From positions 172,752 to 236,751 of the IMG/VR virus record IMGVR_UViG_3300021959_006017: a DNA stretch of 64,000 nt. One strand, 5' to 3'. The notes under the pieces are model-generated. The model searched no databases. It was not told the DNA's origin and saw only the letters and a list, made by a program, of their open reading frames with translations. A program made the translations under genes and the position numbers. Of the stretch, positions 12,800-58,635 are shown piece by piece (the first letter of the stretch is position 1; each line of letters opens with the position of its first letter).

Positions 12800-12805
12800 A
12801 AACAC

Positions 12806-12853
12806 TTGACTCCTTAGCATTTATACGCTATAATATGTATAAAGCTAAGGAGT
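12806..12853 (+). promoter_or_regulatory. Sigma70 promoter inside an SD-sequestering inverted repeat
   Basis: TTGACT-N17-TATAAT; arms ACTCCTTAGC(A)TTTATAC / GTATAAAGCTAAGGAGT. Confidence 0.7.
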
Positions 12854-12857
12854 TTTC

Positions 12858-18289: not shown

Positions 18290-18555
18290 AACATATAAGT
18301 GCTATATTAGGATCACCTAAAGAAACTATTACTGAAAAATTTGCTTGGTGGCCTGTACGCAGTACCTGGAGTAAAAAAGTTATTTGGTTGAAAAAGTATA
18401 TGCACATGGAACTTTACTACGATAGCGAAATGTCCCATCCTATACGTTCAAATACATTTACATTCGTTTACACAAAAAACGAATATCTATTATATCTATT
18501 AAGAAAGAAAGAAGGGAGTGTTTCAAGAGATCCACTCCCTAAAGTTAGTTATTAA
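18286..18555 (+). CDS. Hypothetical protein
   Basis: ATGA coupling; FAWWPV motif. Confidence 0.55.
   Translation: MKHISAILGSPKETITEKFAWWPVRSTWSKKVIWLKKYMHMELYYDSEMSHPIRSNTFTFVYTKNEYLLYLLRKKEGSVSRDPLPKVSY
18501..18540 (-). terminator. Rho-independent terminator downstream of phoH
   Basis: AGGGAGTG/CACTCCCT stem followed on the - strand by TCTTTCTT. Confidence 0.6.
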
Positions 18556-19274
18556 GCGTCTCCGTATACCTGGAGTACTTCTTTAACTGCTTCGTGTCTT
18601 TCTATATCTCCTTGTCCAAAGTTGACTATGTCTATATGATTTGCACTTGATTGTTCTAGTAGTTTTGTAAAGTTTATTAGCCCATTATCGTTAAGTCTAT
18701 CTGCTTGCGCAAGATCGCCTGTTACAGCCATCATAGACCCTTCACCTAGACGTGTAAGCAACATTTTCATTTGGTTTTGTGTTGCATTTTGCATCTCATC
18801 TGCTAGAATAAAAGCATTTTTAAAAGTCCGTCCACGCATATATGCTAATGGAGCGATTTCAATAATACCTTCTTCTATCATTCCTTCTATTTCCCGTGCA
18901 TTAAAATACTCACGTAAAACATCAAAAATCGGCCGTGTCCACGGTGCCATTTTTTGTTCTAATGTGCCGGGTAAGAAACCTAGATCTTCGTCAACGCTCA
19001 CTGCTGGGCGTGTAACAATAATCTTGTCTACTGCACCTTCCTTGAACATTTTTACTGCAACTTGTACAGCCAATAAAGTTTTACCAGTACCAGCTGGACC
19101 AATACCGAAAACGATATCTTTGGTATCATCTAGTAACTTTAATACGTAACTTTCTTGGTTTCTATTTCTTGGAAGTATTTGAACTTGTTTCTTTTTTTGG
19201 AATGTATTGAACTTAATAACGTTATCTACGTTTGCGTTTGAATGCTGCCGAGCAGCCTTTCTTTTTGCACCCAT
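18552..19274 (-). CDS. phoH: PhoH-family ATPase
   Basis: GPAGTGKT, LGFLPG, YMRGRTF, DEMQN, GDLAQAD. Confidence 0.95.
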   Translation of the reverse strand: MGAKRKAARQHSNANVDNVIKFNTFQKKKQVQILPRNRNQESYVLKLLDDTKDIVFGIGPAGTGKTLLAVQVAVKMFKEGAVDKIIVTRPAVSVDEDLGFLPGTLEQKMAPWTRPIFDVLREYFNAREIEGMIEEGIIEIAPLAYMRGRTFKNAFILADEMQNATQNQMKMLLTRLGEGSMMAVTGDLAQADRLNDNGLINFTKLLEQSSANHIDIVNFGQGDIERHEAVKEVLQVYGDA

Positions 19275-19302
19275 TAAGTGTCCTCCTTTGGGTTAGATTG
19301 GA

Positions 19303-19351
19303 GTAGGGTAGTATGTTCCGTAGAACACTTTGCCCTACAAAAGTATTTATC
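19303..19351 (-). promoter_or_regulatory. Late promoter plus structured 5' leader of phoH
   Basis: - strand GATAAATA (19351-19344), then hairpin GTAGGG..GTTC-TACG-GAAC..CCCTAC. Confidence 0.6.
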
Positions 19352-19387
19352 ACCAGTTCTCGAATAATAACTTATAAGTTAAATCCT

Positions 19388-19395
19388 GATAAATA
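19388..19395 (+). promoter_or_regulatory. Late-type promoter GATAAATA (divergent from the phoH promoter)
   Basis: Intergenic octamer. Confidence 0.65.
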
Positions 19396-19416
19396 AGTAT
19401 ACAAGGAATAATAAAC

Positions 19417-23259: not shown

Positions 23260-24066
23260 ATGGACTTATATACAGTATTGGGCATCCCACGAACAGCATC
23301 TCCAGATGAAATAAAAAAGGCGTATAAGAAACAAGCCATGCGACACCATCCTGACAGAGGTGGTAATCCTGATGAGTTTCGTAAAGTGACTGAAGCATAT
23401 GACGTTCTAAGTAACAGTGATAAAAAGGCAGCATACGACAATCCACAACCAGGATTTAGTTTTAGATCACAGGACTTTGCACAAGGAAATCCTTTCGAAG
23501 GTACACCTTTTGAAAGTATATTTAGGCAAAGGCAAACACCTCGTAATAGAGATGTTCAAATGCCTGTTAATGTTACACTAAGAGATATTGTAACAGGGAA
23601 TCGAGTTGCTATAAACTACCAACTTAGTACAGGTAGAATCGAAACTGTAACTATTGATATTCCACCTGGTGCAAAACACGGTGATCAAATACGTTACGAA
23701 GGATTAGGCGATGAAGGCAATAAAAATTATCCTAGAGGAAACTTAATAGTTCAAATAAGAGTTCGAAAACATCGAGATTGGGCTAGAGATGGAGATAACT
23801 TAACTACAAAAAAATCTGTAAATTTGTTTGACTTTTTAACAGGAGGTGTTATAATAGTTAATACAATAGATGAAAAAAGTGTTAAACTTAACATACCACC
23901 AGGCACTAAACCAGGCACAACATTTAGTATATCAGGATATGGCATTCCTAATATTAACACAAGAAAACCTGGTAACTTATACGTCAAACTTGAAGCAGAA
24001 ATGCCAAAGATAAAAGATGCAAAGTTACTTGAAGAAATAGAAGATTTAAAAAGGAAAATAGGGTAA
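23260..24066 (+). CDS. dnaJ: DnaJ-class co-chaperone (CbpA-like, no Zn finger)
   Basis: J-domain with HPD; C-terminal substrate-binding domain. Confidence 0.9.
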   Translation: MDLYTVLGIPRTASPDEIKKAYKKQAMRHHPDRGGNPDEFRKVTEAYDVLSNSDKKAAYDNPQPGFSFRSQDFAQGNPFEGTPFESIFRQRQTPRNRDVQMPVNVTLRDIVTGNRVAINYQLSTGRIETVTIDIPPGAKHGDQIRYEGLGDEGNKNYPRGNLIVQIRVRKHRDWARDGDNLTTKKSVNLFDFLTGGVIIVNTIDEKSVKLNIPPGTKPGTTFSISGYGIPNINTRKPGNLYVKLEAEMPKIKDAKLLEEIEDLKRKIG

Positions 24067-24070
24067 AATA

Positions 24071-26320
24071 ATGGTAGAACCATCAAAGGATTTACAACTG
24101 GTTTTTGACAAAGCTATCAAAGATGCACAGAAGTTGCGTCACGAATATGTTACACTTGAACATATGATGTTTGCTATGATGTGTGAAGATAACTTTGTTA
24201 AGTTATTAGAAATGTATGGTGCAGATATTGATTATATCAAAGCCAACCTCGAACATCATTTAAAAACAAACAGCGATGATATTATTCTCCCCGAGGATAT
24301 TAAAAAATACAAGCCAAAGAAAACACAGGGTGTAGAACGTGCTTTGAATAGAGCATTTACACAGGTTCTTTTTGCAGGGCGTAGCCATATTGAGTTAAAA
24401 GATCTTTTGCTTAGTATTCTACATGAGAAGAAAAGTATTAGTGCTTACATCTTAGAAAAAGGTGGCGTTGGAAAAGATAAATTCAGTGACTTTGTAAACA
24501 ACGAAGTAGATGAAACACTACTGGAAGATCCTGAACTAACTAACGAAATGCGTAGAGCTATTAAGAGCTTTACAACTAACTTAAACGATCAAGTAAAACG
24601 TGGCAAGGTTGATCCTATTATTGGACGGGCTGACGAACTAGAAAGCCTTTGTTTGGCATTAGGTCGTCGAAGCAAAAATAATGTGCTAATGGTAGGTGAT
24701 CCGGGTGTTGGTAAAACTGCTATTGCAGAAGGACTTGCGTTTAATATCGAACAAGGTAATGTTCCAAGTTTCCTCAAAGAGTATAAAGTCTACAATCTAG
24801 ACATTGGTGCTATGCTTGCTGGTTCAAAATACCGCGGTGACTTTGAAGAACGTTTTAAACTTGTACTAAACGGACTTATCCGTGAAGGCAAGACTATTAT
24901 GTTTATCGACGAAGCACATATGATGAATGGTGCAGGTGCAGGCGGCAGTGGCAACTCAAACGATCTTGCTAATATGCTCAAGCCGGCACTAGCAAAAGGT
25001 GATCTAAAAGTTGTTGCTTCGACTACTTGGGAAGAGTTCCGCAAGTACTTTGAAAAAGATCGTGCGCTGATGCGTCGATTCCAGCGTGTAACTATTGGGG
25101 AACCTTCAAAAGAAACAACATCAGACATTCTAAGAGGTTTACGCAAGTACTATGAAGACTACCATGGAACAACTATTACTGATGACGCTATTGATGCGGC
25201 TATTAAACTAAGCGTTAAGTACCAAAGCGATAAGAAACTGCCAGACAAGGCTATTGACTTGATCGATGTTGCTTGTGCTAGATTTAAAGTTAACGATGAC
25301 GAAAACGAAGAAAAAACTGTAACTGAAGATAGTATCTTTTTTGAGCTTTCAAAAATGCTAAACTTGCCTACAGAACAAGTAGCACAGCGTGAATCAGAAA
25401 ACCTACAACATCTTGAAGACAATCTCAAGAAAGTTGTGTATGGACAAGACGATGCTATTGAAAGTATTGTTGATAAGATTCTTGTTAGCCAAGCAGGACT
25501 TAAACCAGATGATAAACCAGTAGGTGCATTTGTGTTTATGGGTCCAACAGGCACAGGTAAAACTGAAACTGCTAAACAGCTTGCAAATCAACTGGGTGTT
25601 AAACTTGTACGATTTGATATGAGTGAATACATGGAGAAACATAGTGTTGCAAAACTTATTGGCTCACCTCCAGGTTATGTAGGACACGAAGAAAACGCAG
25701 GTCAGTTGATTACTAAACTACAAGAGTCTCCTAACTGTGTACTCCTATTGGATGAGATCGAAAAAGCACACCCTGATGTTGCGCAGATTCTACTACAGAT
25801 TATGGACAACGGCTTGGTTACAGGCTCAAACGGTAAGGAAGCAGATGCACGTAACTGTACACTTATCCTTACAACTAACCTAGGTGCAGCACAAGCTGAA
25901 AAAGGTAGCATTGGTTTTGGTGATGACGAAGACTTTGGTTACGAAGATACAGAGTTTAAAAAGTATTTTGCTCCAGAGTTCCGCAATAGACTTGACGGTG
26001 TTATTACGTTTGCTAAACTTGGCAAAGAAGTAATGATGAAGATTGTTGGCAAGTTCCTTGTTGAACTTAAAGATATGGTCAAAGACAAAGGTATTGCTAT
26101 CGAAGTAACAGATGACGCACTTGACTATTTGGTAGACAAAGGTTTTGATCCTAAAAACGGTGCTCGTCCGCTACAACGTGTGATTGACAAAGACATTAAA
26201 CGTCCTCTTTCAAGACAGATGTTATTTGGTGATCTAAAAAATGGTGGCAAAGTAACAATCGATGTTAAAGATGACGAAGTAGTTCTTTCTGTAGAGGAAC
26301 TTGCAGTTGAAATATTATAA
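24071..26320 (+). CDS. clpA: ClpA AAA+ unfoldase
   Basis: Clp N domain; two AAA modules (GDPGVGKT, GPTGTGKT); IGF loop; no ClpB middle domain. Confidence 0.92.
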   Translation: MVEPSKDLQLVFDKAIKDAQKLRHEYVTLEHMMFAMMCEDNFVKLLEMYGADIDYIKANLEHHLKTNSDDIILPEDIKKYKPKKTQGVERALNRAFTQVLFAGRSHIELKDLLLSILHEKKSISAYILEKGGVGKDKFSDFVNNEVDETLLEDPELTNEMRRAIKSFTTNLNDQVKRGKVDPIIGRADELESLCLALGRRSKNNVLMVGDPGVGKTAIAEGLAFNIEQGNVPSFLKEYKVYNLDIGAMLAGSKYRGDFEERFKLVLNGLIREGKTIMFIDEAHMMNGAGAGGSGNSNDLANMLKPALAKGDLKVVASTTWEEFRKYFEKDRALMRRFQRVTIGEPSKETTSDILRGLRKYYEDYHGTTITDDAIDAAIKLSVKYQSDKKLPDKAIDLIDVACARFKVNDDENEEKTVTEDSIFFELSKMLNLPTEQVAQRESENLQHLEDNLKKVVYGQDDAIESIVDKILVSQAGLKPDDKPVGAFVFMGPTGTGKTETAKQLANQLGVKLVRFDMSEYMEKHSVAKLIGSPPGYVGHEENAGQLITKLQESPNCVLLLDEIEKAHPDVAQILLQIMDNGLVTGSNGKEADARNCTLILTTNLGAAQAEKGSIGFGDDEDFGYEDTEFKKYFAPEFRNRLDGVITFAKLGKEVMMKIVGKFLVELKDMVKDKGIAIEVTDDALDYLVDKGFDPKNGARPLQRVIDKDIKRPLSRQMLFGDLKNGGKVTIDVKDDEVVLSVEELAVEIL

Positions 26321-27005
26321 AACACAAAAACTTTTCTACGGCAAGTACTTGTATAAGGTTTACTTTTACAACGAACTAAATGGCTTCTTTAGAACAGAGT
26401 TCCAGAAAAAAGGAACTCTGAGCTATGCTAGAGAAAAAATAGATCAACTTACAGAATACTATAGACAGGGAATGCCTATGCAAACACCTATCTATAGAAC
26501 ATTTAAACATATTGATGAAGAAACTTATTTAGATGCACGGTTTTTATACGCTACGCTAATACGAAGCAAAGAAGAATACCGTGTTAGAGTTGAAAGTTGC
26601 AACAGAATAAGTATTTTTTCAAACGATGAAAAGTTCATTGACAAGACCGCCAACGGTGTAAGGACTCGATTAGTAGAAGTTCATAAACCTGATGATGTTG
26701 TTAAAGATGAAATACTTGCAAATAAAAACATTATTGTATCACCTAACCCAGTATATTGGCCTATTAAAGTAACACTAGGTAAAAACCGTAGAGATTACAG
26801 TGGTTTGGCTAACTGGATTGAAGCAAATCCAGACAAAGTAAAAATAGGCGAAGTTGCATTAAAATCGTTAAAATCACATGGCTTTGTAAGTGGCTACTAT
26901 TTGTTTGTAAAAACTGACAAAATATTAAATCTTATCAATATAATGATAGGCGATAATATACGCCGTATAGATCAGATTGTTTATAAAGCAGATTTAGATA
27001 AATAG
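26301..27005 (+). CDS. Hypothetical protein
   Basis: 234-aa ORF; start uncertain. Confidence 0.6.
   Translation: MQLKYYKTQKLFYGKYLYKVYFYNELNGFFRTEFQKKGTLSYAREKIDQLTEYYRQGMPMQTPIYRTFKHIDEETYLDARFLYATLIRSKEEYRVRVESCNRISIFSNDEKFIDKTANGVRTRLVEVHKPDDVVKDEILANKNIIVSPNPVYWPIKVTLGKNRRDYSGLANWIEANPDKVKIGEVALKSLKSHGFVSGYYLFVKTDKILNLINIMIGDNIRRIDQIVYKADLDK
26997..27004 (+). promoter_or_regulatory. Late-type promoter GATAAATA, 5 nt before ATG
   Basis: GATAAATA-GTTAT-ATG; heads the 27-35 kb cluster. Confidence 0.6.
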
Positions 27006-27387: not shown

Positions 27388-27957
27388 ATGGAACACTTTG
27401 TAAACATAGTAATGGAAAAGAATGATAACCTAACTGAAAGCCTAGATGAAAGTATCTTTCCAGGCAATATTGTTACAGAATCAGAACAAGGTGCTACTGT
27501 TATTCAAATACCTTTGCCTCGTCATCTAAGCGAACAAGAATCAGATGAATATGCTAACAGACTAGCAAACTATATGTTTGAAAATGGCTATGACGATTTT
27601 GACATTGAAATAAGTTCAGATGAAGAACTTGATGAAATAGAAGAAACATATGACAGTGATGAGTTTTTTGAAAACTATGGTGTTATGTGGTTCAACGAAG
27701 ATGATGAAATGGACGAGGCAGAATATCAAGGACGTAAAGTTAAGCTAGGCAAGCCAATGCGTGGCGATGTTAAAAAGTTTAAAGTATACGTTAAGGATCC
27801 AAAGACTAAGAACGTTAAAAAAGTAAACTTTGGCGATCCTGACATGAAGATTAAAAAATCAAATCCGGCACGTAGACGTTCATTCCGTGCTAGACACAAC
27901 TGTGATAACCCAGGTCCACGTACTAAGGCACGTTACTGGTCATGTAGGAAATGGTAA
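27388..27957 (+). CDS. Acidic leader plus basic C-terminal module (putative internal head protein)
   Basis: Acidic half ends MDE|AEYQGRKVKL...RRSFRARHNC...YWSCRKW. Confidence 0.65.
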   Translation: MEHFVNIVMEKNDNLTESLDESIFPGNIVTESEQGATVIQIPLPRHLSEQESDEYANRLANYMFENGYDDFDIEISSDEELDEIEETYDSDEFFENYGVMWFNEDDEMDEAEYQGRKVKLGKPMRGDVKKFKVYVKDPKTKNVKKVNFGDPDMKIKKSNPARRRSFRARHNCDNPGPRTKARYWSCRKW

Positions 27958-27958
27958 T

Positions 27959-28285
27959 ATGCGTATTGACGAGTTTGCACCACGAGTAGATAATAGCTTA
28001 CCCTATGATGTAGTAGACGATGTAAAATCATATATGATAAACGATAAGGATTTTTATCGTAGATCTCTATATCCAGCAATGTGTAAGTTACAAGATCAAA
28101 TGAAAAGTGGAAAAATGTCACCACTTACACTTGCTCCTGTAATAGATAAAGCATGTGCAGGATATTGTTCAAAGTTTAATATTCCAAAAGAACCTAAAGA
28201 CCTGTTGGATAAGTCAGAAAAAGTAGAACTTATGCAGCGTCTTATAGCAGATGAAAGAGAGAACTTAGAAAAAGGAGAGTTTTGA
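27959..28285 (+). CDS. Hypothetical protein (MRIDEF start)
   Basis: Start reassigned to ATG 27959 after the upstream stop. Confidence 0.6.
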   Translation: MRIDEFAPRVDNSLPYDVVDDVKSYMINDKDFYRRSLYPAMCKLQDQMKSGKMSPLTLAPVIDKACAGYCSKFNIPKEPKDLLDKSEKVELMQRLIADERENLEKGEF

Positions 28286-29271
28286 TGCTCCTTAGACAAC
28301 TCTTCGAAGAAAAAGCTCGTAAAGTAGTAGCAGTTATGCCAGGTGGGTTTCATCCATTTCATCCTGGACATAAAAGTTTATATGATTGGGCAGTCAAAAC
28401 ATTCGGACAAAGCAATGTTTACGTGGCAGCAACTAATGACACTGCTACAAGACCTTTCCCATTTGAAGTTAAGAAGAAACTAGCAGCAATGGCTGGTGTT
28501 CCTGAAAGCAACTTTATGCAAGTTAAATCCCCATTTAATAATAGAGAGTATGCCGGCCTTGTAGATGCAGACACTGCCTTAGTATTTGTACGCAGTCAAA
28601 AAGATAAATCAGAACAACCTTTGCCAGATCAAACTAAGAAGAATGGCGAGCCAGGTTACTTGCGTACTTACACAGGCAAAGACCTAAACACTTCAGATGA
28701 AATGGGCTATATGGCATACGGTCCTACTATTAACTTTGACTTTAGTGGTATGCAGATAAAGAGTGCAAGTGAACTTAGAGCCACTTGGCCTGAAATGTCA
28801 GATGATGATAAACTAAAGGCTGCACAACTAATGTACGGAAATGGTGCAGAAGCAGCAGTACAACTTCTAAACAAAGCATTAGGCGATACAGAAGCACCAG
28901 TAGGCGAAAGTGAAGTAGTACTAGACAAAACTAGTTTACGTGGATATATTCGTGATATGATTATAGATCATATTAACCAAGTCGACGATATTAAAAAACT
29001 GTCAGAAATATTATACAATCTAGTAGGCAAGCAAGTTAAGCACCGCGGACAAAGATTTACTGTTACTGATGAAGATATTACAGAAATACTAGGCTTTGCT
29101 ACTAAACGTCCTAAGCAAGCAACAAAAACAGTAAAGCGTAGACCGCCTGAAGAAGATAGTGTACAAGATAAGTTAGCCAAGCGTAGAAAACTAGCAAGTA
29201 GAGTAGGCGTAGATAAAGCATTTACAAGCAAAAGTGTTGATAAAGATTTAAACAAATATTTTGGAAAGTAA
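28285..29271 (+). CDS. HxGH nucleotidyltransferase domain plus C-terminal modules
   Basis: MLLRQLFEE leader; PGGFHPFHPGH and SASELR motifs. Confidence 0.75.
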   Translation: MLLRQLFEEKARKVVAVMPGGFHPFHPGHKSLYDWAVKTFGQSNVYVAATNDTATRPFPFEVKKKLAAMAGVPESNFMQVKSPFNNREYAGLVDADTALVFVRSQKDKSEQPLPDQTKKNGEPGYLRTYTGKDLNTSDEMGYMAYGPTINFDFSGMQIKSASELRATWPEMSDDDKLKAAQLMYGNGAEAAVQLLNKALGDTEAPVGESEVVLDKTSLRGYIRDMIIDHINQVDDIKKLSEILYNLVGKQVKHRGQRFTVTDEDITEILGFATKRPKQATKTVKRRPPEEDSVQDKLAKRRKLASRVGVDKAFTSKSVDKDLNKYFGK

Positions 29272-29272
29272 A

Positions 29273-29494
29273 ATGGATGAGCTAGAATATATTAAAAAAC
29301 TAGCTGGTGTAAATGAGTTTAAAGGTTACACAGAATATCAAATAGACGAAAACCCTAGCATTACTGCCACAGCAATCAAACAAAAAGAACGAGAAATGGG
29401 AGTTAAGCCAGGCGATCAAGAATGGTTTAAACTTTGGTTCTCTAAACCTTATATGACCGGTGTTCCAAATTTTAGAGGACGCAAGAAAAAATGA
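29273..29494 (+). CDS. Hypothetical protein (KKLAGV motif)
   Basis: MDELEYIKKLAGVNE...PGDQEWFKLWFS. Confidence 0.6.
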   Translation: MDELEYIKKLAGVNEFKGYTEYQIDENPSITATAIKQKEREMGVKPGDQEWFKLWFSKPYMTGVPNFRGRKKK

Positions 29495-30198
29495 AAATAA
29501 CTGACTTGCTGGAAGATGGACGTATTGTTAAAGGTGTTAATACTACAGTTGATGTAGGTGTTAATCAGATTCCTATCGAAGCAAATAAGTTTGGCAACAA
29601 AGTAGACAAAGACGGGCGGCCGCCCACCCTAAGCAAAAAAGTCAAAGGCTCTAGTACAAATGTACTGTTTAATCTAGGACTTGCAGAAGGCTACAAACTA
29701 CAACTAGAGCGTGACAAGCAAATGCTTGTTCTAAATATTAAGAATACAAAAACAGGTCAACGCACAGAAGTCCGTGGTAAACCGGGTTACGAAAGTGGTA
29801 ACTACGATCCAACTGACGATTTACATCAACTATTAGACACACTAGGTAAAAGTGTTGATATTTCACAACTGATGAATGGAGAACCTGTAGGTATACGTCC
29901 TGATCATCCCGATGGAAAGAAAGCAAAAGCAGCTACTCACAGAGCATTTAGTAAAATGGAACTTGCATACATGGAGGGTGGACATAGTCTAGATGATTTA
30001 GACAAGCCTACTCCTAGTGTTGCAGACATCGCTAAAATGCACGATGTTAGTGTAAGTCATATTGTACGTCAACTTGAAAAAGGCATTGAAGCAGAATACG
30101 AACACACATCAGACTTTGATCTTGCAAAAGAAATAGCACTTGATCATCTAGCAGAAGATCCTGACTACTACTTTAAACTTGGGATATTAGAGCTATGA
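29491..30198 (+). CDS. Modular putative internal head protein
   Basis: MKITDLLE leader; C-terminal module GIEAEYEHT...IALDHLAEDPDYY. Confidence 0.65.
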   Translation: MKITDLLEDGRIVKGVNTTVDVGVNQIPIEANKFGNKVDKDGRPPTLSKKVKGSSTNVLFNLGLAEGYKLQLERDKQMLVLNIKNTKTGQRTEVRGKPGYESGNYDPTDDLHQLLDTLGKSVDISQLMNGEPVGIRPDHPDGKKAKAATHRAFSKMELAYMEGGHSLDDLDKPTPSVADIAKMHDVSVSHIVRQLEKGIEAEYEHTSDFDLAKEIALDHLAEDPDYYFKLGILEL

Positions 30199-31463
30199 GA
30201 TGGTCAGAAGTTACAGAAAAGTGGTCACAGAAATACAAGCGTAGTATTAACTGTTCAAATCCAAAAGGATTTAGTCAAAAAGCTCATTGTGCTGGACGCA
30301 AGAAAACAAATGAAGCATTTGTTAAGCCACAGTTTGATGTAGAATGGGACGAAGCGGCTCGCTATCCAGAGTTTCAAAAGATTGGCAAAGAAGCGTGGAT
30401 TGAACTTGCTAAAACTGGTAAGGCTATAACTATTAAAAGTGCTAAGGGTATTGAGAACACAGATGCCGCAGATCCAGATAGTTTTAAAAGTTTAGATCCA
30501 GCAAAGCAGAAAAGAGCGTTAGCACAACTAGAAAAAGGTTCGGTTGAAATGCCTATTGTTGCTGTTTACAGTGACGGATACAAAGAACTTGTAGGCGGTA
30601 ATACAAGACTTACTGCTATGATGGCACAAAACGGCAAAGCAACTGTGTGGGCATTTAAAGTGCCAGACGAAGTTGCCGAACTAGCTGAAAACTTTGCTGA
30701 TGGTAAAAGTAAAGCAAAGCGTAGACAAATGGATGAAAAAACATACCATGAGTCATTAGAAGAAGCACTAGGTGAAATTGCTCCTAATACAGAAATATAT
30801 GTTGATATGGATGGCGTACTTGCTGACTTTTTTGGCGAATGGTCAAAGTCGCAAGGTGTTGATAACTGGAAAGACATCAAAGATCCTGCAAAAGCAATTG
30901 GTGATATTAAAAGCATAGAAGACTTTTGGTTAAACTTACCAATACTACCTAAAGCAAAAGAATTACTAGGACTAATAAAACAAGTTAAAGGCAAGTATAA
31001 GATATGTACAAGTCCATTGGCAGACGATCCACGTAGTGAACCACACAAACGTGAGTGGGTAAAGAAGAATTTATCGTTTTTCCCACCAGAAGAAGTCATT
31101 GTTACACATAACAAGCCGCAGTTTGCAAAACAAAAAGACGGTACTCCTAACATACTAATAGATGACTATGGTGTTAATATAAACGCTTGGGAAGAAGCAG
31201 GCGGCATAGGATTTAAATACAAAGACTATAAGTTTAATAGAACAGCAAAGGCAATAAAAAATAGAATAGAAGATCCTGTAGAAGAAAACTTTGCTGACGG
31301 TAAGAAAAAAGGAAAGAGCCGCCCAGGGCGTGTAAAACGTGCTGGTGCAAGTTGTAATGGCAGTGTAACTGCACTCCGCAAACGAGCAAAAAATAGCTCC
31401 GGAGAAAAAAGGAGGATGTATCATTGGTGCGCAAACATGAAATCGGGAAGGAAGAAAAAATAG
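30195..31463 (+). CDS. Modular polyprotein: basic peptide, ParB/Srx-like domain, 5'(3')-deoxyribonucleotidase-like HAD domain, basic peptide
   Basis: MRWSEVTE leader; PIV...LVGGNTRL; YVDMDGVLADF...ILIDDYGVN; two ENFADGK linkers. Confidence 0.75.
   Translation: MRWSEVTEKWSQKYKRSINCSNPKGFSQKAHCAGRKKTNEAFVKPQFDVEWDEAARYPEFQKIGKEAWIELAKTGKAITIKSAKGIENTDAADPDSFKSLDPAKQKRALAQLEKGSVEMPIVAVYSDGYKELVGGNTRLTAMMAQNGKATVWAFKVPDEVAELAENFADGKSKAKRRQMDEKTYHESLEEALGEIAPNTEIYVDMDGVLADFFGEWSKSQGVDNWKDIKDPAKAIGDIKSIEDFWLNLPILPKAKELLGLIKQVKGKYKICTSPLADDPRSEPHKREWVKKNLSFFPPEEVIVTHNKPQFAKQKDGTPNILIDDYGVNINAWEEAGGIGFKYKDYKFNRTAKAIKNRIEDPVEENFADGKKKGKSRPGRVKRAGASCNGSVTALRKRAKNSSGEKRRMYHWCANMKSGRKKK
30687..31303 (+). 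repeat. 20-bp near-perfect direct repeat flanking the HAD domain
   Basis: GAAAACTTTGCTGATGGTAA (30687) and GAAAACTTTGCTGACGGTAA (31284). Confidence 0.85.
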
Positions 31464-31660
31464 TAGAACTATATCCAGACGGATATAGCAGAAAATGGAG
31501 AGAATATGAAAGTGTTCCTGTAGAACACTATATCGCCAAACACAAAGAACACGAAGCACGAAGAGCAAGTTTTAATGAACGTGCAGAGTACTGGAAAACA
31601 TACAAAAAATATTTAAAAAATACTAATCCCGAAACTGGTTTTAACATGAATGACTTCTAA
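31424..31660 (+). CDS. Hypothetical protein
   Basis: Fills the gap between genes; start uncertain. Confidence 0.45.
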   Translation: MVRKHEIGKEEKIVELYPDGYSRKWREYESVPVEHYIAKHKEHEARRASFNERAEYWKTYKKYLKNTNPETGFNMNDF

Positions 31661-31672
31661 GGTAAATACAAT

Positions 31673-32020
31673 ATGAAGATGAAAGAACTATTAACAGAAG
31701 AAGAGTTTAAGGATGTACATAGTAGTACACTTCCTCATGCAAGTTATTATCCGGAAATGCCTGCAAGTAGTCCTTACTACGCATACCGTTTCGGAATGGG
31801 CATGGCGGATCATACTACTTTTCATCCCAACGGACCATCAAAAAACTCAGCAGTTATAGTTCAGTATTCAAAAGGGGAAGAAGAAATAGTCGCCGCAACA
31901 GAAAAGAAACTAGGAAAGTTTGGTAAAAAGACCTTAGCAGATGGTGGAAGTAACGAACCAGAAGGCACAAACAAAACCAGTCCTGTTGCAAAGAAAAAGA
32001 AAAACAAATACGGTGTATAA
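31673..32020 (+). CDS. Putative internal head protein
   Basis: MKMKELLTEE leader; YYAYRFG; basic KKKKNKYGV end. Confidence 0.6.
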   Translation: MKMKELLTEEEFKDVHSSTLPHASYYPEMPASSPYYAYRFGMGMADHTTFHPNGPSKNSAVIVQYSKGEEEIVAATEKKLGKFGKKTLADGGSNEPEGTNKTSPVAKKKKNKYGV

Positions 32021-32022
32021 CT

Positions 32023-32364
32023 ATGAGATTTCGTGAACTAATAAAAGAAGAAGGATATGACACACAACGTGATGCAGATGCTGTAAGTGGTAAGCCTCGT
32101 AAAACATCTGTAGGTGGTGGCAAAAAGCCTAAAGGTTATAGCAAAGACAAAGCAGAGAAAGCCGCTATGGATAATGTTAAAAAAGCCTTAGCAAAAGAAT
32201 CAGCAACAGGTATGGGTGCAGCAAGTATTGCTACAGCAGTAGGAAATGTAGGCCCAACTATCAGTAGAAACATGTATAACGACGATGGCACTATGAAAAA
32301 CGGCGTTGACTTTGATAATCTAATGGGTGGCAAAAAGAAATCAAAGAAGCGTAAAAAGGCATAA
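32023..32364 (+). CDS. Putative internal head protein
   Basis: MRFRELIKEE leader; LAKE|SATG junction. Confidence 0.6.
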   Translation: MRFRELIKEEGYDTQRDADAVSGKPRKTSVGGGKKPKGYSKDKAEKAAMDNVKKALAKESATGMGAASIATAVGNVGPTISRNMYNDDGTMKNGVDFDNLMGGKKKSKKRKKA

Positions 32365-32367
32365 ATA
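32360..32367 (+). promoter_or_regulatory. Late-type promoter CATAAATA
   Basis: Octamer overlapping the stop codon. Confidence 0.55.
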
Positions 32368-32395
32368 CTATATAATGCGCATTACGGAGTAATCA

Positions 32396-33145
32396 ATGAG
32401 AGAAAAAGATTTAAAAGAAGGTTTAGGCGATCTAGCTCATAAAGCAGAAAAAGACCATGAAGTACAAATGGCTCGTGCTGACCTATACAAACTAGCAAAG
32501 TATGCTATCAAGTTACACGATATGCTCAAGCAAGTACCTGAAGAAGCAGGACTAGAAGGTTGGGTACAATCAAAAATCACAAAAGCAGCTGATTACATTG
32601 GCAGTGTTTATCACCATCTTGATTACGAAGAAGCAACAGGCGAACTAGGTGAAAGCGCAGTAAAAGAAGCAAGTTGCGGATGCGATGAAAATAGCTGTTC
32701 ACACTGCAAAGGTAAGCACACACTAGACGAAGTAGGTCAAAAGTGTGAGTGCTGTGGCAATATGATTAAAGAAGTAACTGCTGAAGGCAAGTTCAAATCA
32801 GATGCACAACGTAAAGCTATTCATGCAGCAAAAGCAAGTGGCAAGCGTAGCAAAAAGAAACTCCGTGACCACAGTGACTTATCAGATAGACTAGCAGCAA
32901 AACTCGAATCAAAAAAAAAGGTAGCTGAACGCAGTCTTTCCAAAGGCGAAGAAAAAGACAAAGAAAAGTACGTCAAAGGCATGAAAAAAGCCAAAGGCGA
33001 CTTTAAAGATCGCTACGGCAAAGATGCAGAAGCAGTTATGTATGCAACTGCTACCAAAATGGCTAAAGAGGCAACTAAGATTACACCAAAACAAATCAAA
33101 GCAGATAAAATAAAATCTCAAAAGATTACAGCAAAGACGGAGTAA
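32396..33145 (+). CDS. Modular putative internal head protein with Cys-rich (Zn?) module
   Basis: MREKDLKE leader; LEGWVQSKITKAADY; CGC..CSHC..CECC. Confidence 0.65.
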   Translation: MREKDLKEGLGDLAHKAEKDHEVQMARADLYKLAKYAIKLHDMLKQVPEEAGLEGWVQSKITKAADYIGSVYHHLDYEEATGELGESAVKEASCGCDENSCSHCKGKHTLDEVGQKCECCGNMIKEVTAEGKFKSDAQRKAIHAAKASGKRSKKKLRDHSDLSDRLAAKLESKKKVAERSLSKGEEKDKEKYVKGMKKAKGDFKDRYGKDAEAVMYATATKMAKEATKITPKQIKADKIKSQKITAKTE

Positions 33146-33148
33146 CAC

Positions 33149-33457
33149 ATGTCAGAGTCATTTAAAGCACTTATGCAAAAGATTGCAGAAATAGAAGAAC
33201 GCAAAGAAGACGACAAAGACGGAGATTTAAAAGGCTTTGACAGTCGTACAATGCGAGCATTAACTCGTATTAAGGCACAGTATCCAAATGCTCCAAACGA
33301 CCTTGCAGCACTTCTACGCCATGTAACTAACGTTGATAAAGACAGTGATACTAATGACGATGAACATATTAGCAGAATCAAAAAACTAGAAGATAAAGTA
33401 GAAGAACTAGAAAAGAAACTTACACTATTGTTAAGGAAAAAAAGTAATGGACTTTAA
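33149..33457 (+). CDS. Hypothetical coiled-coil protein
   Basis: 102-aa ORF within the cluster. Confidence 0.55.
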   Translation: MSESFKALMQKIAEIEERKEDDKDGDLKGFDSRTMRALTRIKAQYPNAPNDLAALLRHVTNVDKDSDTNDDEHISRIKKLEDKVEELEKKLTLLLRKKSNGL

Positions 33458-35003
33458 CGCACTACAACATAAACTTTTTGCACTAGATCCAAGCGATCTT
33501 GCAGCTGACAAACAAGCACTTATAGCACAAGCACAAGGAGCAGTTGTAGATACGCCAAAAGTAGATTATGTAACAGAAAGTACAGAAGTTCCAAAAGGCA
33601 GTATGCCTATTGATTTAGATCTAGCAGGACTTACAGCACTTGCAGGTGTAAGACTAGATGAAAAACAAAAGATGGGTAGTGCAGGACAAGCAAAAGGCAA
33701 AGACCCTATGCCAAAAGCAGAACCTGGACGTACAAAGCATCCATTAAAAGATAAACTTGTAGGCGAAGCAGAAACCTCAACAGGTTTTGAACCTCAAGGA
33801 TTCAAAGCAGCATTTAAAAACTATAATAAAGTTGATCCGTGGTTAGGTACTAGTACTGACGATGATGGTAAAAAGAAAGACGAACCAAAAACTCCACCTA
33901 AAAAAGGTGAAAAGCCAGCACCAGGACCAACACCAGGACCAACTCCAAAACCTACTCCAAGTCCGTGGCCTACAAGTAAAGAAGGTTATACACTAAAAGT
34001 AGGAGACTTAGTCACTTACGCAAACAAAAAAGGACAAACACGAGAAGATGTTCCAGTTGTTAAACTTTTAAAAGGAACAAAAGACGGTAAAGGTCGTCCA
34101 CAGATACAGCTACAACTACGTGGTGCAACTTATGCTATTAGTAGAGAACAAATACAAAAAGTAAATGGTAAAACATTTACACTAGATGATGCTGAAGCAG
34201 GTACAGGTACACTAAAAGACCAACTGTTACAAGCTCTAGAAGCGTACAAGCAAAAGCCACAGATTAAACCACGTGATCCAAATGCACAAGCAATGAATGA
34301 CTTGCGCAGAAGTGGTGCAATGGGTGCGCACAAAGACAAAAAGCGTGATGCTAAGATGGGCAAAGTTAAGCACAAAGGCAAGATAGACGAAAGCAAAATG
34401 TCGTTTAACGACATGATGAAAAACAGAGAGTTTTATTACACATATAAACAATATGTAAGTGGTAACGCTAATGTAGATCAAGTGGCTGAGTTAGTAAGAG
34501 GCCGTGTTGATAAAGAAAAGTTTGCTGACGAAATACATAGAAAAGGTGTTGAGTACGGTGGCGCAAAAGGTAAACGAATCAAAGATCTTGCAGATATTAT
34601 AAGAAAAGATTCTAACGTGCTTGATTTACCAGGAAAAGCATTTAGTAAGATTAAAAAAATGGTAGGTATGGGCGAAGGTATGGACGAATCTTATACTAAA
34701 GTAGATGGTATGGAAGCTGAAGAACTACGCAAACAGTATGCCAAAGACTGGGAAATACGTAAAGGCAAGTATCTTTATAAAAAAGTAGCCTTTGACGACT
34801 ACAACACTGTACTACGTTTCTTAATGGTTATCGAAAAACCACAGATTGAACTAGATCATTTTGCAAATATTAAGTTCTTTTACAATGAAGCAGAGCTTGT
34901 TGTATACACACACGACACAAAAGGTCTTACAACACTTGACTTTAAACTTGCTGTGCAAATAGATCGTGCGTTAGATCGAATGGGAGCGAAAGAGATAGGA
35001 TGA
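33447..35003 (+). CDS. Modular polyprotein ending in a pterin-4a-carbinolamine dehydratase-like domain
   Basis: LAGVRLDE, LVGE, IDE, MDE junctions; Pro/Thr linker; C-terminal W...LDHFANI...YTHDTKGLTTLDFKLA..ID. Confidence 0.7.
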   Translation: MDFNALQHKLFALDPSDLAADKQALIAQAQGAVVDTPKVDYVTESTEVPKGSMPIDLDLAGLTALAGVRLDEKQKMGSAGQAKGKDPMPKAEPGRTKHPLKDKLVGEAETSTGFEPQGFKAAFKNYNKVDPWLGTSTDDDGKKKDEPKTPPKKGEKPAPGPTPGPTPKPTPSPWPTSKEGYTLKVGDLVTYANKKGQTREDVPVVKLLKGTKDGKGRPQIQLQLRGATYAISREQIQKVNGKTFTLDDAEAGTGTLKDQLLQALEAYKQKPQIKPRDPNAQAMNDLRRSGAMGAHKDKKRDAKMGKVKHKGKIDESKMSFNDMMKNREFYYTYKQYVSGNANVDQVAELVRGRVDKEKFADEIHRKGVEYGGAKGKRIKDLADIIRKDSNVLDLPGKAFSKIKKMVGMGEGMDESYTKVDGMEAEELRKQYAKDWEIRKGKYLYKKVAFDDYNTVLRFLMVIEKPQIELDHFANIKFFYNEAELVVYTHDTKGLTTLDFKLAVQIDRALDRMGAKEIG

Positions 35004-35638
35004 GACTTCAGGACTTATATCCTAAGTTCAATCCAGACCCTTACTTACGCAAACCAATAGCACGACATCAAGTAGAAAATCTTCCATTTAAAGACTTTGA
35101 TAAGGACGGATATGAAGTTCCGACTCCTTTAGAGTGGTTACACTACGAAGCAAACAATATTAATCTTAATAGAGAAATACAATACCATATTGCACCTGTA
35201 CAAGAATGGTATACAGACGTAGAACAAAGTGAACACGGGCTTGTGCTAGATCATTGTATGCTATTAACACGTTATGCGTTCGCAGGTGAAGCAAGAGAAC
35301 AAATCATAGAAGTTTCAAAAAACAGACCAATCTTACAAAAACTGTTAAATATCAAACCCAAGTGGGGTATAGACTTTAGTCTTGATTATGTAACACACGA
35401 TATTGTTATGGAAGTGATACATATAGAACAAGACTTTGATGATATTAACGAAGCAGAGCAAGCAAAGGCAAAACTTGAATACATTATTGATTCAACAGAT
35501 TGGTATGATGGAGCAATGCGTTTATGGCAACGCAAAGACGAATGGATCAACCTTTCTTCAGACGATCATTCGGACTATAAAGCACAGTTCTTTGGCTGGC
35601 ATCGTGCTTTTGACAACAAAAAAGTATTTTCTACTTGA
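35000..35638 (+). CDS. Hypothetical protein
   Basis: FDKDGYE, KPKWGIDFSLDY; ATGA coupling. Confidence 0.65.
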   Translation: MRLQDLYPKFNPDPYLRKPIARHQVENLPFKDFDKDGYEVPTPLEWLHYEANNINLNREIQYHIAPVQEWYTDVEQSEHGLVLDHCMLLTRYAFAGEAREQIIEVSKNRPILQKLLNIKPKWGIDFSLDYVTHDIVMEVIHIEQDFDDINEAEQAKAKLEYIIDSTDWYDGAMRLWQRKDEWINLSSDDHSDYKAQFFGWHRAFDNKKVFST

Positions 35639-39753: not shown

Positions 39754-40147
39754 TTATCTTTTTTGAATGTAAACTGATATTAATAAAATCACTAAGAAAC
39801 TCGAAATGGTTTGATAGGTCGTTAAAAAGCTCACCTGTAACTTGGCTGTAAGAGGTTTTACCTATGTTTTGGAAATATGATCTAGGAAGTCCTTTGTTAG
39901 ATCCAAAAGACGGAAACACACCAGAAACAAAAAGGCAAGTATCACCAAGTTCTTTTGCATTTGATCTATTGTTGATTTTTAAATATGCTTCTGCAAAAGA
40001 GTTTTCAGGATGCCAGTTAGGTTTATCTATGTGTACTGCAAGTACCATAACAACATAATGCTCAAGATGCACCGGCAACTCATAGCCCGATGTTTCCTGA
40101 GCTTCTCTAACTATACCAAAGAAGGCATTAGTAAAAGCATCGTTCAT
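39725..40147 (-). CDS. Hypothetical protein, antisense orientation
   Basis: KELGDTCLFVSGVFP; GATAAATA ends 4 nt before ATG 40147. Confidence 0.6.
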   Translation of the reverse strand: MNDAFTNAFFGIVREAQETSGYELPVHLEHYVVMVLAVHIDKPNWHPENSFAEAYLKINNRSNAKELGDTCLFVSGVFPSFGSNKGLPRSYFQNIGKTSYSQVTGELFNDLSNHFEFLSDFINISLHSKKITNLQSQTNC

Positions 40148-40161
40148 AAAGTATTTATCGG

Positions 40162-40190
40162 TTGACAAACTAACCTAAATACTGTATTAT
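40162..40190 (+). promoter_or_regulatory. Sigma70 promoter with nested CTAAATA
   Basis: TTGACA-AACTAACCTAAATACTG-TATTAT. Confidence 0.7.
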
Positions 40191-40209
40191 AATATTAGGA
40201 GTATAGAGA

Positions 40210-57363: not shown

Positions 57364-57366
57364 GGG

Positions 57367-57405
57367 TTGACAAACAATCTAATGATGCTATACTATATGT
57401 ATAGT
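57367..57405 (+). promoter_or_regulatory. Sigma70 promoter with the same palindrome ACTATATGTATAGT
   Basis: TTGACA-N16-TATACT with TG extension. Confidence 0.7.
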
Positions 57406-57442
57406 TAGAAATAAGCACTGATGACTAAGAAGGGTAATACAA

Positions 57443-58528: not shown

Positions 58529-58533
58529 TGTAC

Positions 58534-58570: not shown

Positions 58571-58574
58571 ATGG

Positions 58575-58602: not shown

Positions 58603-58635
58603 ATAAGTATAAAGTAAGATAGAGGACATAGCACA

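What the first reader, a model, noticed from the sequence alone, without database searches (positions are those of the whole stretch)
27388..35638. Array of capsid-targeted, protease-cleaved modular polyproteins: a candidate injected-cargo system
Seen: about 12 consecutive genes behind late-type promoters, seven with a similar short leader ending in Glu (MRIDE, MLLRQLFEE, MKITDLLE, MRWSEVTE, MKMKELLTE, MRFRELIKE, MREKDLKE). Inside, unrelated modules are joined at hydrophobic-X-Glu junctions (MDE|AEY, VGE|SE, ITE|IL, LAE|GY, LAE|NF, VEE|NF, LGE|SA, VAE|RS, LDE|KQ, IDE|SK, MDE|SY). Modules alternate between very basic peptides and recognisable enzyme folds (HxGH nucleotidyltransferase, ParB/Srx-like, HAD nucleotidase, pterin dehydratase-like, Cys-rich). 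Known: T4 internal proteins carry an N-terminal capsid-targeting sequence that prohead protease gp21 removes after (I/L)-X-E, and they are injected with the DNA. Inference: this phage extends that principle into beads-on-a-string polyproteins, so one gene packages several effectors that are cut apart in the head and delivered before any transcription.
Basis: partly seen in the sequence, partly recalled or inferred. Interest (0 to 1): 0.9.

Follow-up and report, generated by a model that had tools for sequence, protein, structure and literature searches.

The report
Leader-tagged modular cargo precursors in phage
A T4-related marine phage carries a late-gene array of mosaic proteins whose short N-terminal leaders and hydrophobic-x-Glu joints match the T4 signals for loading proteins into the head and cutting them there. 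This suggests, but does not prove, that several cargo proteins are packaged as one precursor.

Summary
Twelve + strand genes (27388-35638) lie between a ClpA-like gene and the DNA polymerase of a T4-related phage (IMG/VR contig, no cultured close relative).

- **Leaders:** eight of the 12 genes start with a hydrophobic-x-Glu leader, against 8 of 76 other genes in the window.
- **T4 match:** the leaders follow the same pattern as the T4 ipII, ipIII, gp24 and gp22 N-termini read from NC_000866.
- **Mosaic array:** in about 34 related loci the array is syntenic, but modules recur alone, fused or permuted. Module starts are preceded by hydrophobic-x-Glu.
- **Global test:** one basic C-terminal module occurs in 1842 protein clusters. 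In the 151 occurrences examined, P1 was Glu in all 151 and P3 was V/I/L/M/F in 114, in unrelated contexts.
- **Cross-virus test:** another module starts at Met in podoviruses and an archaeal virus, but sits behind hydrophobic-x-Glu in three T4-like lineages.
- **Promoters:** ATAAATA late-type motifs head two transcription units, not every gene.
- **Folds:** HAD nucleotidase and pterin dehydratase are confirmed, HxGH transferase is marginal, and ParB/Srx is unconfirmed.

Capsid targeting with prohead-protease processing is the best explanation (about 0.6). Virion presence, cleavage and injection are untested. I rate it a new variant of a known kind.

The parts
26998..27004 (+). ATAAATA late-promoter-like motif heading the first transcription unit
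   Evidence: Eleven of the 12 + strand ATAAATA sites in the window lie just upstream of gene starts, although the motif is under-represented overall (16 seen, 25.7 expected). It is conserved upstream of the orthologous gene in 47 of 51 relatives. It resembles the cyanomyovirus late promoter NATAAATA (PMC2984593).
27010..27378 (+). Conserved 122-aa gene resembling a virion structural protein; first gene of the operon that holds the array
   Evidence: It matches phrog_14467 'virion structural protein' at 3.9e-13. It is 40% identical (E 4e-12) to Atu_ph07 gp290, which was detected in virions by one peptide (PMC6102473 Table S5).
27388..27957 (+). g1 (189 aa): folded N-domain 1-81, acidic linker, junction [MLIV]-D-E|A-E-Y at E110 (nt 27715-27717), basic module 111-189 (pI 10.8)
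   Evidence: D109, E110 and A111 are invariant in 32 orthologues, and P3 is always M, L, I or V. The C-module stands alone and starts at Met in a podovirus, a Roseobacter phage and an archaeal spindle virus. In HTVC008M and Melnitz it is fused behind hydrophobic-x-Glu. The AF2 model puts residues 3-10 in a strand of the N-domain, so 'VME' at 8-10 is probably not a free leader.
27959..28285 (+). g2 (108 aa) with the 5-residue leader MRIDE
   Evidence: The leader pattern M-[RK]-[ILM]-x-E-F is kept in relatives. No family match was found.
28285..29271 (+). g3 (328 aa): leader MLLRQLFE, HxGH nucleotidyltransferase-like core, then junction ITE|IL at E267 before a basic tail (pI 10.5)
   Evidence: Pfam CTP_transf_like scores 21.6 bits against a 21 cut-off. 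Homology with relatives drops at E267. Melnitz and HTVC008M carry a leader plus the same enzyme at the head of 650- and 596-aa mosaics.
29273..29494 (+). g4 (73 aa): 15-residue leader ending LAGVNE, then a basic peptide
   Evidence: The ..[KR]-L-A-G-[VI]-x-E leader recurs in 38 relatives, and internally in g12-like proteins it is followed by hydrophobic-x-Glu.
29491..30198 (+). g5 (235 aa): leader MKITDLLE, GRIVKGVN module 9-66, junction LAE|GY at E66 (nt 29686-29688), then an acidic part ending in DUF5661
   Evidence: Homology with relatives drops exactly at residue 66. The module is a stand-alone gene in L007 (66 aa) and in Sinorhizobium phage Phosso (64 aa). Of 117 short homologues worldwide, 57 have a leader ending in hydrophobic-x-Glu directly before the module. 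DUF5661 matches at 2e-13.
30195..31463 (+). g6 (422 aa): leader 1-8 | Cys-basic KWS module 9-40 | unknown domain 41-165 | short basic NFADGK piece | 5'(3')-deoxyribonucleotidase 191-364 | basic C-module 365-422 (nt 31287-31460)
   Evidence: The same modules occur in other orders and other proteins in relatives. L048 has nucleotidase, then the unknown domain, then the C-module. The nucleotidase core is always preceded by hydrophobic-x-Glu. AF2 is confident for 194-359, and E190 and E364 fall at its edges in low-confidence linkers. The best Foldseek match is 1q92 at 4e-6. The C-module is preceded by Glu in 40 of 41 local contexts and 151 of 151 global ones.
31673..32364 (+). g8 (115 aa, leader MKMKELLTE) and g9 (113 aa, leader MRFRELIKE): small basic proteins with Lys-rich tails, behind a GTAAATA variant at 31663
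   Evidence: g8 has no homologue in the 80 loci. Only the C-terminal part of g9 is shared.
32361..32367 (+). ATAAATA late-promoter-like motif heading the second transcription unit
   Evidence: It is present upstream of the orthologous GLGxLA gene in 26 of 27 relatives.
32396..33145 (+). g10 (249 aa): leader MREKDLKE, helical GLGDLA module 9-86, Cys-rich basic module 87-178, basic module 179-249
   Evidence: The GLGxLA module lies behind leaders in 20 contexts and behind an internal hydrophobic-x-Glu in 8. Homology breakpoints fall near E83-E91 and at E178. The module is also found inside large mosaics of cyanophages S-SM2 and S-SCSM2R and of Flavobacterium phage Immuto.
33149..33457 (+). g11 (102 aa), no homologue in the related loci
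   Evidence: Its membership of the system is uncertain.
33447..35003 (+). g12 (518 aa): N-module ending LAGVRLDE (E72), long basic Pro-rich part, junctions IDE|SK (E315) and MDE|SY (E414), pterin-4a-carbinolamine dehydratase domain 415-518
   Evidence: Pfam Pterin_4a matches at 2.3e-14 over residues 423-507. Homology breakpoints fall at E315 and E414. The LAGV-x-hydrophobic-x-E motif is conserved in relatives.
35000..35638 (+). g13 (212 aa, acidic): conserved last gene, with a leader-like start that lacks the Glu
   Evidence: No family match was found. Its membership is uncertain.

Best explanation
The array encodes precursor proteins that are loaded into the prohead and cut apart there by the phage's T4 gp21-type Glu-specific maturation protease.

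**Proposed steps (all inferred):**
1. Late transcription starts from the ATAAATA motifs.
2. An 8-10-residue amphipathic N-terminal leader (M-[KR]-hydrophobic-x-[DE]-hydrophobic-x-E) acts like the T4 capsid-targeting sequence and docks the whole precursor onto the scaffolding core.
3. The protease cuts after each exposed hydrophobic-x-Glu, removing the leader and separating the modules.
4. Acidic pieces leave the head. Basic modules (pI about 10-11.6) stay with the DNA, and the enzyme modules stay trapped. These are a deoxyribonucleotidase, an HxGH nucleotidyltransferase and a pterin dehydratase-like domain.
5. The retained products enter the cell with the DNA.

**What is shown:** the leader and junction grammar, its conservation, the module shuffling at the junctions, and the late-type, virion-gene context.
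For: - **Leader enrichment.** Leaders are enriched 5- to 28-fold in array genes over neighbouring genes.
- **T4 pattern.** They share the pattern of the T4 ipII, ipIII, gp24 and gp22 N-termini read from NC_000866. In T4, residues 4 and 7 of the propeptide direct targeting and residues 8 and 10 direct processing (PMC9026906).
- **Peptide-level similarity.** Leaders of different genes share at most 9 nt.
- **Module starts.** Four modules checked locally are each preceded by hydrophobic-x-Glu, whether they are N-terminal behind a leader or internal. So is the nucleotidase core.
- **Global survey.** For the NFADGK module, P1 is Glu in 151 of 151 occurrences and P3 is V/I/L/M/F in 114 of 151. P2, P4 and P5 are unconstrained. 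All five stand-alone forms keep a leader; the shortest is MVIE.
- **Unbiased test.** Hydrophobic-x-Glu ends within +/-4 residues of 85 of 206 homology breakpoints, against 40 +/- 5.5 at random. Hydrophobic-x-Asp and hydrophobic-x-Gln show no clear excess (39 against 30 +/- 4.7; 18 against 15.5 +/- 3.5), and hydrophobic-x-Lys is depleted.
- **Cross-virus comparison.** The g1 C-module starts at Met-Ala in three non-T4-like viruses. In three T4-like lineages hydrophobic-x-Glu sits exactly where that Met would be.
- **Shuffling.** Modules are permuted and redistributed between relatives.
- **Structure.** The junctions flank the confidently modelled nucleotidase domain, in low-confidence linkers.
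- **Context.** Late-type motifs are conserved, and the first gene of the operon resembles a virion protein.
- **Atu_ph07 slot.** In Atu_ph07 the syntenic slot between ClpA and the polymerase holds proteins found in virions by MS.
- **Slot in nearest relatives.** In L003 and L004 the same slot holds very large genes that I read as tail-fibre-like from their N-termini only; no family search was run.
- **Protease in relatives.** Relatives encode a gp21 homologue, and their capsid, scaffold and portal-adjacent proteins start with the same kind of leader.
Against: - No proteomic or biochemical datum shows that any of these proteins is in a virion or is cleaved.
- The protease, scaffold and capsid genes of this contig are outside the window. 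The head modules I fetched could not be tied to this lineage.
- The virion proteins in the Atu_ph07 slot are not homologues of the array, apart from gp290.
- Within the window, internal hydrophobic-x-Glu is hardly above chance. Only 41% of homology breakpoints carry the motif.
- An invariant Glu before a module could instead be the first residue of that module.
- In g1 the N-terminal 'VME' is modelled inside a beta-strand.
- The enzymes are of types usually regarded as cytoplasmic auxiliary metabolic genes.
- Some modules also occur in viruses that have no such protease.
Confidence: 0.6

Rival explanations
1. The precursors are targeted and processed as above, but the products are assembly and DNA-condensing components (prohead core, charge neutralisers) rather than host-directed effectors. 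They are either expelled during maturation or act only inside the head.
For: Many modules are simply very basic or very acidic peptides with no enzyme fold. T4 core proteins gp22, gp67 and gp68 carry the same N-terminal motif and are cut into fragments (PMC9026906). The array backbone is conserved in order across relatives, as a structural set would be.
Against: Intact enzyme domains are embedded in the precursors: the nucleotidase retains its DMDGV motif, and there are also Pterin_4a and an HxGH transferase. The high turnover of modules between close relatives looks more like an arms-race periphery than an assembly core.
Confidence: 0.25
2. These are ordinary uncleaved multidomain cytoplasmic proteins (auxiliary metabolism and DNA binding). 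On this view hydrophobic-x-Glu is a favoured linker or N-cap at domain starts, and the leader is an N-terminal helix selected for expression or folding.
For: The enzyme types are typical auxiliary genes, annotated as such in other phages. Hydrophobic-x-Glu is common by chance. There is no direct evidence of cleavage. Modules also occur in viruses without a T4-type protease.
Against: This does not explain four findings:
- Stand-alone forms in T4-like lineages always keep a leader that ends in the same tripeptide, while non-T4-like viruses start the module at Met.
- P3 is constrained while P2 and P4 are free, across 151 unrelated contexts.
- Asp and Gln do not substitute for Glu at these positions.
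- The leaders match the T4 propeptides.
Confidence: 0.2
3. The leader and junctions are signals for another machine, for example the adjacent phage ClpA-like unfoldase with ClpP, or a different Glu-specific protease acting in the cytoplasm.
For: The array lies directly downstream of conserved DnaJ-like and ClpA-like genes in all relatives and in Atu_ph07.
Against: No known Clp recognition signal resembles hydrophobic-x-Glu. The ClpA and DnaJ pair is also conserved in Atu_ph07, where the slot holds unrelated virion proteins without leaders. The motif matches the gp21 logo instead.
Confidence: 0.07
4. It is a chance resemblance or a DNA-level repeat (a recombination cassette at gene starts).
For: The motifs are short and Glu-rich in a Lys- and Glu-rich region (AT skew up to 0.37).
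Against: The statistics argue against chance. Leaders share at most 9 nt between genes and vary freely in sequence while keeping the pattern.
Confidence: 0.02

Closest known systems
T4 internal proteins IPI, IPII, IPIII and Alt, with the capsid-targeting sequence and gp21 processing
   Same: Both have a short N-terminal propeptide with hydrophobic residues three apart that ends in (L/I)-x-Glu. Both have unrelated, often basic, cargo behind a shared leader, and an enzyme cargo has a precedent in Alt. Both show late expression and high turnover of cargo between relatives (PMC3012670).
   Different: Here one leader serves a chain of two to six unrelated modules separated by further hydrophobic-x-Glu sites. 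There is no sequence homology to the T4 mature proteins. P3 also accepts Val and Met. Packaging and cleavage are unproven.
Polyvalent proteins of phages and conjugative elements (Iyer et al. 2017, PMC5512222)
   Same: Both are mosaic multidomain proteins in late or virion gene contexts that are proposed to travel with the DNA. Both show extensive domain shuffling, and processing into separate effectors has been proposed for both.
   Different: Those proteins are very large and are thought to be processed by their own peptidase domains, with a characteristic domain repertoire. Here no peptidase domain was found, the modules are small, and the joints carry the signature of the prohead protease.
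Inner-body and ejection proteins of phiKZ, 201phi2-1 and SPN3US
   Same: In both, many head proteins are cut after Glu by a gp21 homologue, with multiple sites per protein and paralogous families that share conserved N-termini (PMC5694885; PMC9026906).
   Different: Their motif has a small residue at P3 (S/A/G-x-E) and their propeptides often exceed 100 residues. Here P3 is hydrophobic and the leaders are 5-15 residues, as in T4.
Core-protein precursors of adenovirus, and the pp220 and pp62 polyproteins of African swine fever virus (from my own knowledge, not tested here)
   Same: In both, basic DNA-associated peptides and core components are released inside the particle by the virion maturation protease.
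   Different: The viruses, proteases and cleavage motifs are unrelated. This is an analogy only.

Membership tests
T4-type capsid-targeted internal proteins | N-terminal propeptide of about 7-20 residues resembling the capsid-targeting sequence and ending in (L/I)-x-Glu | tested here: met
   Seven window genes meet this, and 101 of 446 array proteins in relatives fit the strict pattern. The pattern equals that of the T4 ipII, ipIII, gp24 and gp22 N-termini.
T4-type capsid-targeted internal proteins | The phage encodes a gp21-family prohead protease and a scaffolding core | tested here: inconclusive
   Neither is in the window. The relative Atu_ph07 has a gp21 homologue (gp204, PMC6102473). More than 570 IMG/VR loci encode proteins 52-58% identical to it. 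None shares a gene with the window, so they could not be linked to this lineage.
T4-type capsid-targeted internal proteins | Late transcription | tested here: met
   ATAAATA motifs lie at 26998 and 32361, of the same kind as those upstream of the baseplate and virion genes, and are conserved in relatives. This rests on the motif only; there are no expression data.
T4-type capsid-targeted internal proteins | Mature protein present in the head with its N-terminus after the Glu, and ejected with the DNA | not testable with these tools
   No proteome of a carrier phage was readable. The S-SCSM2R supplement is not held.
T4-type capsid-targeted internal proteins | Homology of the mature part to T4 IPI, IPII, IPIII or Alt | tested here: not met
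   No PHROG or Pfam match to internal proteins was found. These proteins are not conserved even among the T-even phages, so this is a weak criterion.
Polyvalent proteins (Iyer et al. 2017) | Two or more unrelated domains in one phage polypeptide, with shuffling between relatives | tested here: met
   g3, g5, g6, g10 and g12 all qualify.
Polyvalent proteins (Iyer et al. 2017) | An own processing peptidase (zincin-like MPTase) or the typical effector domain repertoire | tested here: not met
   No peptidase, ART or other signature domain appeared in the Pfam or PHROG scans.
phiKZ-type processed head proteins | Cleavage motif with a small residue at P3 (S/A/G-x-E) | tested here: not met
   P3 is V, I, L, M or F in 114 of 151 cases, and A in 10.
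5'(3')-deoxyribonucleotidase, NT5C/HAD (g6 residues 191-364) | Profile match above the curated cut-off, HAD fold, and the DxDxV motif | tested here: met
   Pfam scores 31.5 against a 24.8 cut-off. phrog_2643 matches at 2.4e-21. AF2 pLDDT is about 90 and Foldseek matches 1q92 at 4e-6. The DMDGV motif is present.
Pterin-4a-carbinolamine dehydratase (g12 residues 415-518) | Profile match above the curated cut-off | tested here: met
   Pfam PF01329 scores 53.7 against a 26 cut-off, covering positions 4-90 of 91.
HxGH nucleotidyltransferase (g3 residues 9-200) | Profile match and the HxGH motif | tested here: inconclusive
   Pfam PF01467 scores 21.6 against a 21 cut-off, over the first 57 profile positions only. 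The H-P-G-H motif is visible.
ParB/Srx-like (g6 residues 41-165) | Profile or fold match | tested here: not met
   No Pfam hit at E <= 0.1. The AF2 model of this part has pLDDT below 50.

The most novel reading that the evidence does not exclude
Marine T4-like phages share a general cargo grammar. They include cyanophages, SAR11 and OM43 phages and their jumbo relatives, which are among the most abundant viruses. Under this grammar any module placed behind hydrophobic-x-Glu in a leader-tagged precursor is packaged, released by the prohead protease and delivered with the DNA. Internal head cargo would then be a combinatorial, rapidly shuffled library. It would include ready-made enzymes of nucleotide and possibly NAD metabolism that act before any phage gene is expressed.
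Probability: 0.35. Interest if true: 0.85.

Novelty: new variant of a known kind. Interest (0 to 1): 0.75.

Why it matters
Targeting proteins into the T4 head with a short propeptide is a classic result, but it is known for single small proteins in coliphages.

If the reading here is right, the same device has become a modular polyprotein system. Pieces of it occur in 371 cyanophage records, and one module alone occurs in 1842 protein clusters. That would:
- assign a role to a large block of 'hypothetical' genes in ocean phages;
- predict cleavage sites to the residue;
- suggest that metabolic enzymes counted as auxiliary genes may in part be delivered as protein.

It is directly testable in phages that are already cultured. 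No paper in the searchable library contains these motifs.

Tried and rejected
- **Megablast.** A search of the region against 50,697 phage records gave no match.
- **T4 late consensus.** TATAAATA occurs once, on the - strand. I replaced it with ATAAATA after reading the intergenic spacers.
- **tblastn.** Searches with g12 and with the basic C-module found nothing in phage records, the latter probably because of the low-complexity filter.
- **DNA-level repeat or recombination cassette.** Rejected, because leaders share at most 9 nt.
- **Alignments of g6.** MAFFT alignments with permuted fragments misplaced the N-terminal domain (A2 and A3). I dropped those rows, so the N-terminal half of the model is uninformative.
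- **Fold of the g1 N-domain.** Only insignificant PII- and ferredoxin-like matches appeared (E about 0.08).
- **Linking the window to a head module.** Gene sharing with L092-L171 failed, and no array motifs lie near those proteases.
- **Proteomic evidence.** The S-SCSM2R supplement is not held and the ORF is not named in the text. Two cyanophage reviews say nothing on internal proteins.
- **Database names.** All 117 short homologues of the GRIVKGVN module are unnamed, 'hypothetical', or in one case evidently misnamed.

Full report
**What the window is.** The window is the last 64 kb of IMG/VR contig IMGVR_UViG_3300021959_006017 (236.7 kb). Its genes are T4-like: a baseplate hub, a clamp loader, and a DNA polymerase 44-50% identical to those of Sinorhizobium phage Phosso, Agrobacterium phage Atu_ph07 and other jumbo T4 relatives. 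Nothing close is in the phage collection at DNA level.

The finding covers 12 + strand genes between a DnaJ-like and ClpA-like pair and the polymerase. The same order is seen in Atu_ph07: DnaJ, ClpA, a variable slot, polymerase, then later an ATPase and an HNH gene.

**The observation.** All seven quoted leaders are there. In the window, a hydrophobic-x-Glu tripeptide ends within the first ten residues of 8 of 12 array genes, against 8 of 76 others (p = 7e-5).

Inside the proteins the tripeptide is common anyway (61 seen, 47 +/- 6 expected).

**Comparative evidence.** A search with the ClpA-like protein returned 473 relatives, and 80 loci were fetched. The slot is syntenic, but its proteins match the window's only in pieces.

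- **Sharp breakpoints.** Homology drops at LAE|GY in g5 and at VEE|NF in g6, among others.
- **Modules move.**
  - The GRIVKGVN module is a gene of its own in L007 and in Phosso.
  - The basic C-module of g6 is a 64-aa gene behind the leader MKISEITE in L025.
  - L048 carries the g6 modules in a different order.
- **Module starts.** Four modules checked, and the nucleotidase core, each follow hydrophobic-x-Glu, whether behind a leader or inside a protein.
- **Unbiased count.** The tripeptide lies within four residues of 85 of 206 homology breakpoints, against 40 +/- 5.5 at random. The same tripeptide ending in Asp or Gln shows no clear excess, and the one ending in Lys is depleted.
- **Leader enrichment in relatives.** 226 of 446 array proteins carry a leader, against 99 of 1061 others.

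**Global tests.** A profile of the C-module, built without the Glu, found 1842 cluster representatives among 1.84 billion proteins.

In the best 150, the residue before the module is Glu in all 151 occurrences. P3 is V, I, L, M or F in 114. P2, P4 and P5 vary freely, and the upstream sequences are unrelated. The five stand-alone forms all keep a leader, the shortest being MVIE.

Of 117 short homologues of the GRIVKGVN module, 57 begin with very diverse leaders of the same pattern.

The basic C-module of g1 gives a natural control. In a pelagiphage podovirus, a Roseobacter phage and an archaeal spindle-shaped virus it is a stand-alone protein that starts Met-Ala-x-Tyr. In this lineage and in the T4-like phages HTVC008M and Melnitz it is fused, with hydrophobic-x-Glu placed exactly where that Met would be.

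**Comparison with T4.** I read the T4 N-termini from NC_000866 rather than from memory. ipII, ipIII, gp24, gp22, gp67 and gp68 all begin with short leaders ending in (L/I)-x-Glu, the same pattern as here.

The review PMC9026906 states three relevant points:
- The first ten residues of IPIII suffice for targeting.
- Residues 4 and 7 govern targeting, and residues 8 and 10 govern processing.
- The device may let T4-like phages load various proteins.

Atu_ph07 has a gp21 homologue. Its capsid, scaffold and portal-adjacent proteins, and those of related IMG/VR head modules, start with the same kind of leader.

**Expression context.** ATAAATA is under-represented overall, yet 11 of its 12 + strand copies sit just upstream of genes. 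These include baseplate and virion genes, the endolysin, the gene before the array (26998) and g10 (32361). Both array sites are conserved in relatives.

The motif resembles the cyanomyovirus late promoter NATAAATA. Replication genes carry TTGACA...TATAAT instead.

The gene heading the operon resembles a virion protein and Atu_ph07 gp290. In Atu_ph07 the slot holds gp284-gp290, all found in virions by MS. In L003 and L004 it holds very large genes whose N-termini look like those of tail fibres; I ran no family search on them.

**Structure.** AF2 models the g6 nucleotidase domain confidently for residues 194-359. E190 and E364 lie at its edges, in low-confidence linkers. The fold matches deoxyribonucleotidases.

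In g1 the junction lies in a low-confidence acidic stretch. The N-terminal 'VME' is inside a strand, so g1 may lack a free leader.

**Reach.** The same modules appear in mosaic proteins next to structural genes in several cultured phages:
- HTVC008M, a 596-aa protein;
- Melnitz, a 650-aa protein;
- Immuto, 907- and 841-aa proteins;
- S-SCSM2R, a 724-aa protein between the two terminase genes.

Pieces of the S-SCSM2R protein occur in 371 cyanophage records.

**Verdict.** The sequence grammar is real, conserved and specific. Its best explanation is capsid targeting plus prohead-protease processing of modular precursors (about 0.6).

Retention of the products in the head and their injection are inferred, not shown. 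The main rivals are processed assembly components and uncleaved fusion proteins.

I found no prior description of these motifs, and the databases name none of these proteins informatively. It is a new variant of the T4 internal-protein system and is related in concept to polyvalent proteins.

Noticed in passing
window 23260-26320: A phage-encoded J-domain protein and a 749-aa ClpA-like double AAA+ protein are conserved next to each other in 473 relatives and in Atu_ph07 (gp293, gp292). The translation shows an I-G-F tripeptide in a Gly- and acid-rich loop of the second AAA+ module, about where ClpA carries its ClpP-docking loop.
   Followed up: partly
window 12800-12857, 40059-40209, 57364-57442, 58529-58635: Sigma-70-like TTGACA-N17-TATAAT pairs sit upstream of replication and nucleotide-metabolism genes, in contrast with the ATAAATA motifs upstream of virion genes. 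A stem plus T-run follows at about 58540-58575.
   Followed up: partly
window 31464-31672: The only long gap inside the array holds a small conserved reading frame (..EHYIAKHKEHE..YWKTYKKYL). It is shared with 41-48-aa genes in L011, L073 and L075. Its start codon in the window is unclear.
   Followed up: partly
L003:13962-19769, L004:13367-21455: In the two relatives closest by ClpA identity, most of the array is replaced by very large genes (1935, 1195, 621 and 605 aa). I read them as tail-fibre-like from their N-termini only. The slot is therefore a hyperplastic region for virion-associated genes.
   Followed up: partly
window 27718-27954; L085, L086, L087: The 79-aa basic module with a conserved Cys pair (..HNCDNPGP..ARYWSC..) is shared by T4-like myoviruses, pelagiphage podoviruses, Roseobacter phages and a Nitrosopumilaceae spindle-shaped virus. 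That is an unusually wide spread for a small viral protein.
   Followed up: partly
window 31287-31460 and alignment A1: In a variant of the C-module both Cys residues are replaced together (Cys...Cys becomes Thr/Lys...Leu). This suggests a paired contact or a disulfide.
   Followed up: no
L084 (Flavobacterium phage Immuto, 97-120 kb): A different N-terminal motif (..F-[DN]-L-[KR]-x-F-L-x-E-N-K-L..) recurs on three genes. The 'MKKSxL..' leaders recur on several others, between the tail spike and the terminase. This may be a second leader type.
   Followed up: no
window 18552-19416: This is the only stretch with a - strand gene (18552-19274), followed by a long non-coding gap. Local GC skew drops to about zero there.
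   Followed up: no
L091 (Atu_ph07 gp195): A nucleotidyltransferase annotated as a T4-like conserved gene lies near the portal, inside a cluster of virion proteins found by MS. It is not similar to g3 by BLAST.
   Followed up: partly
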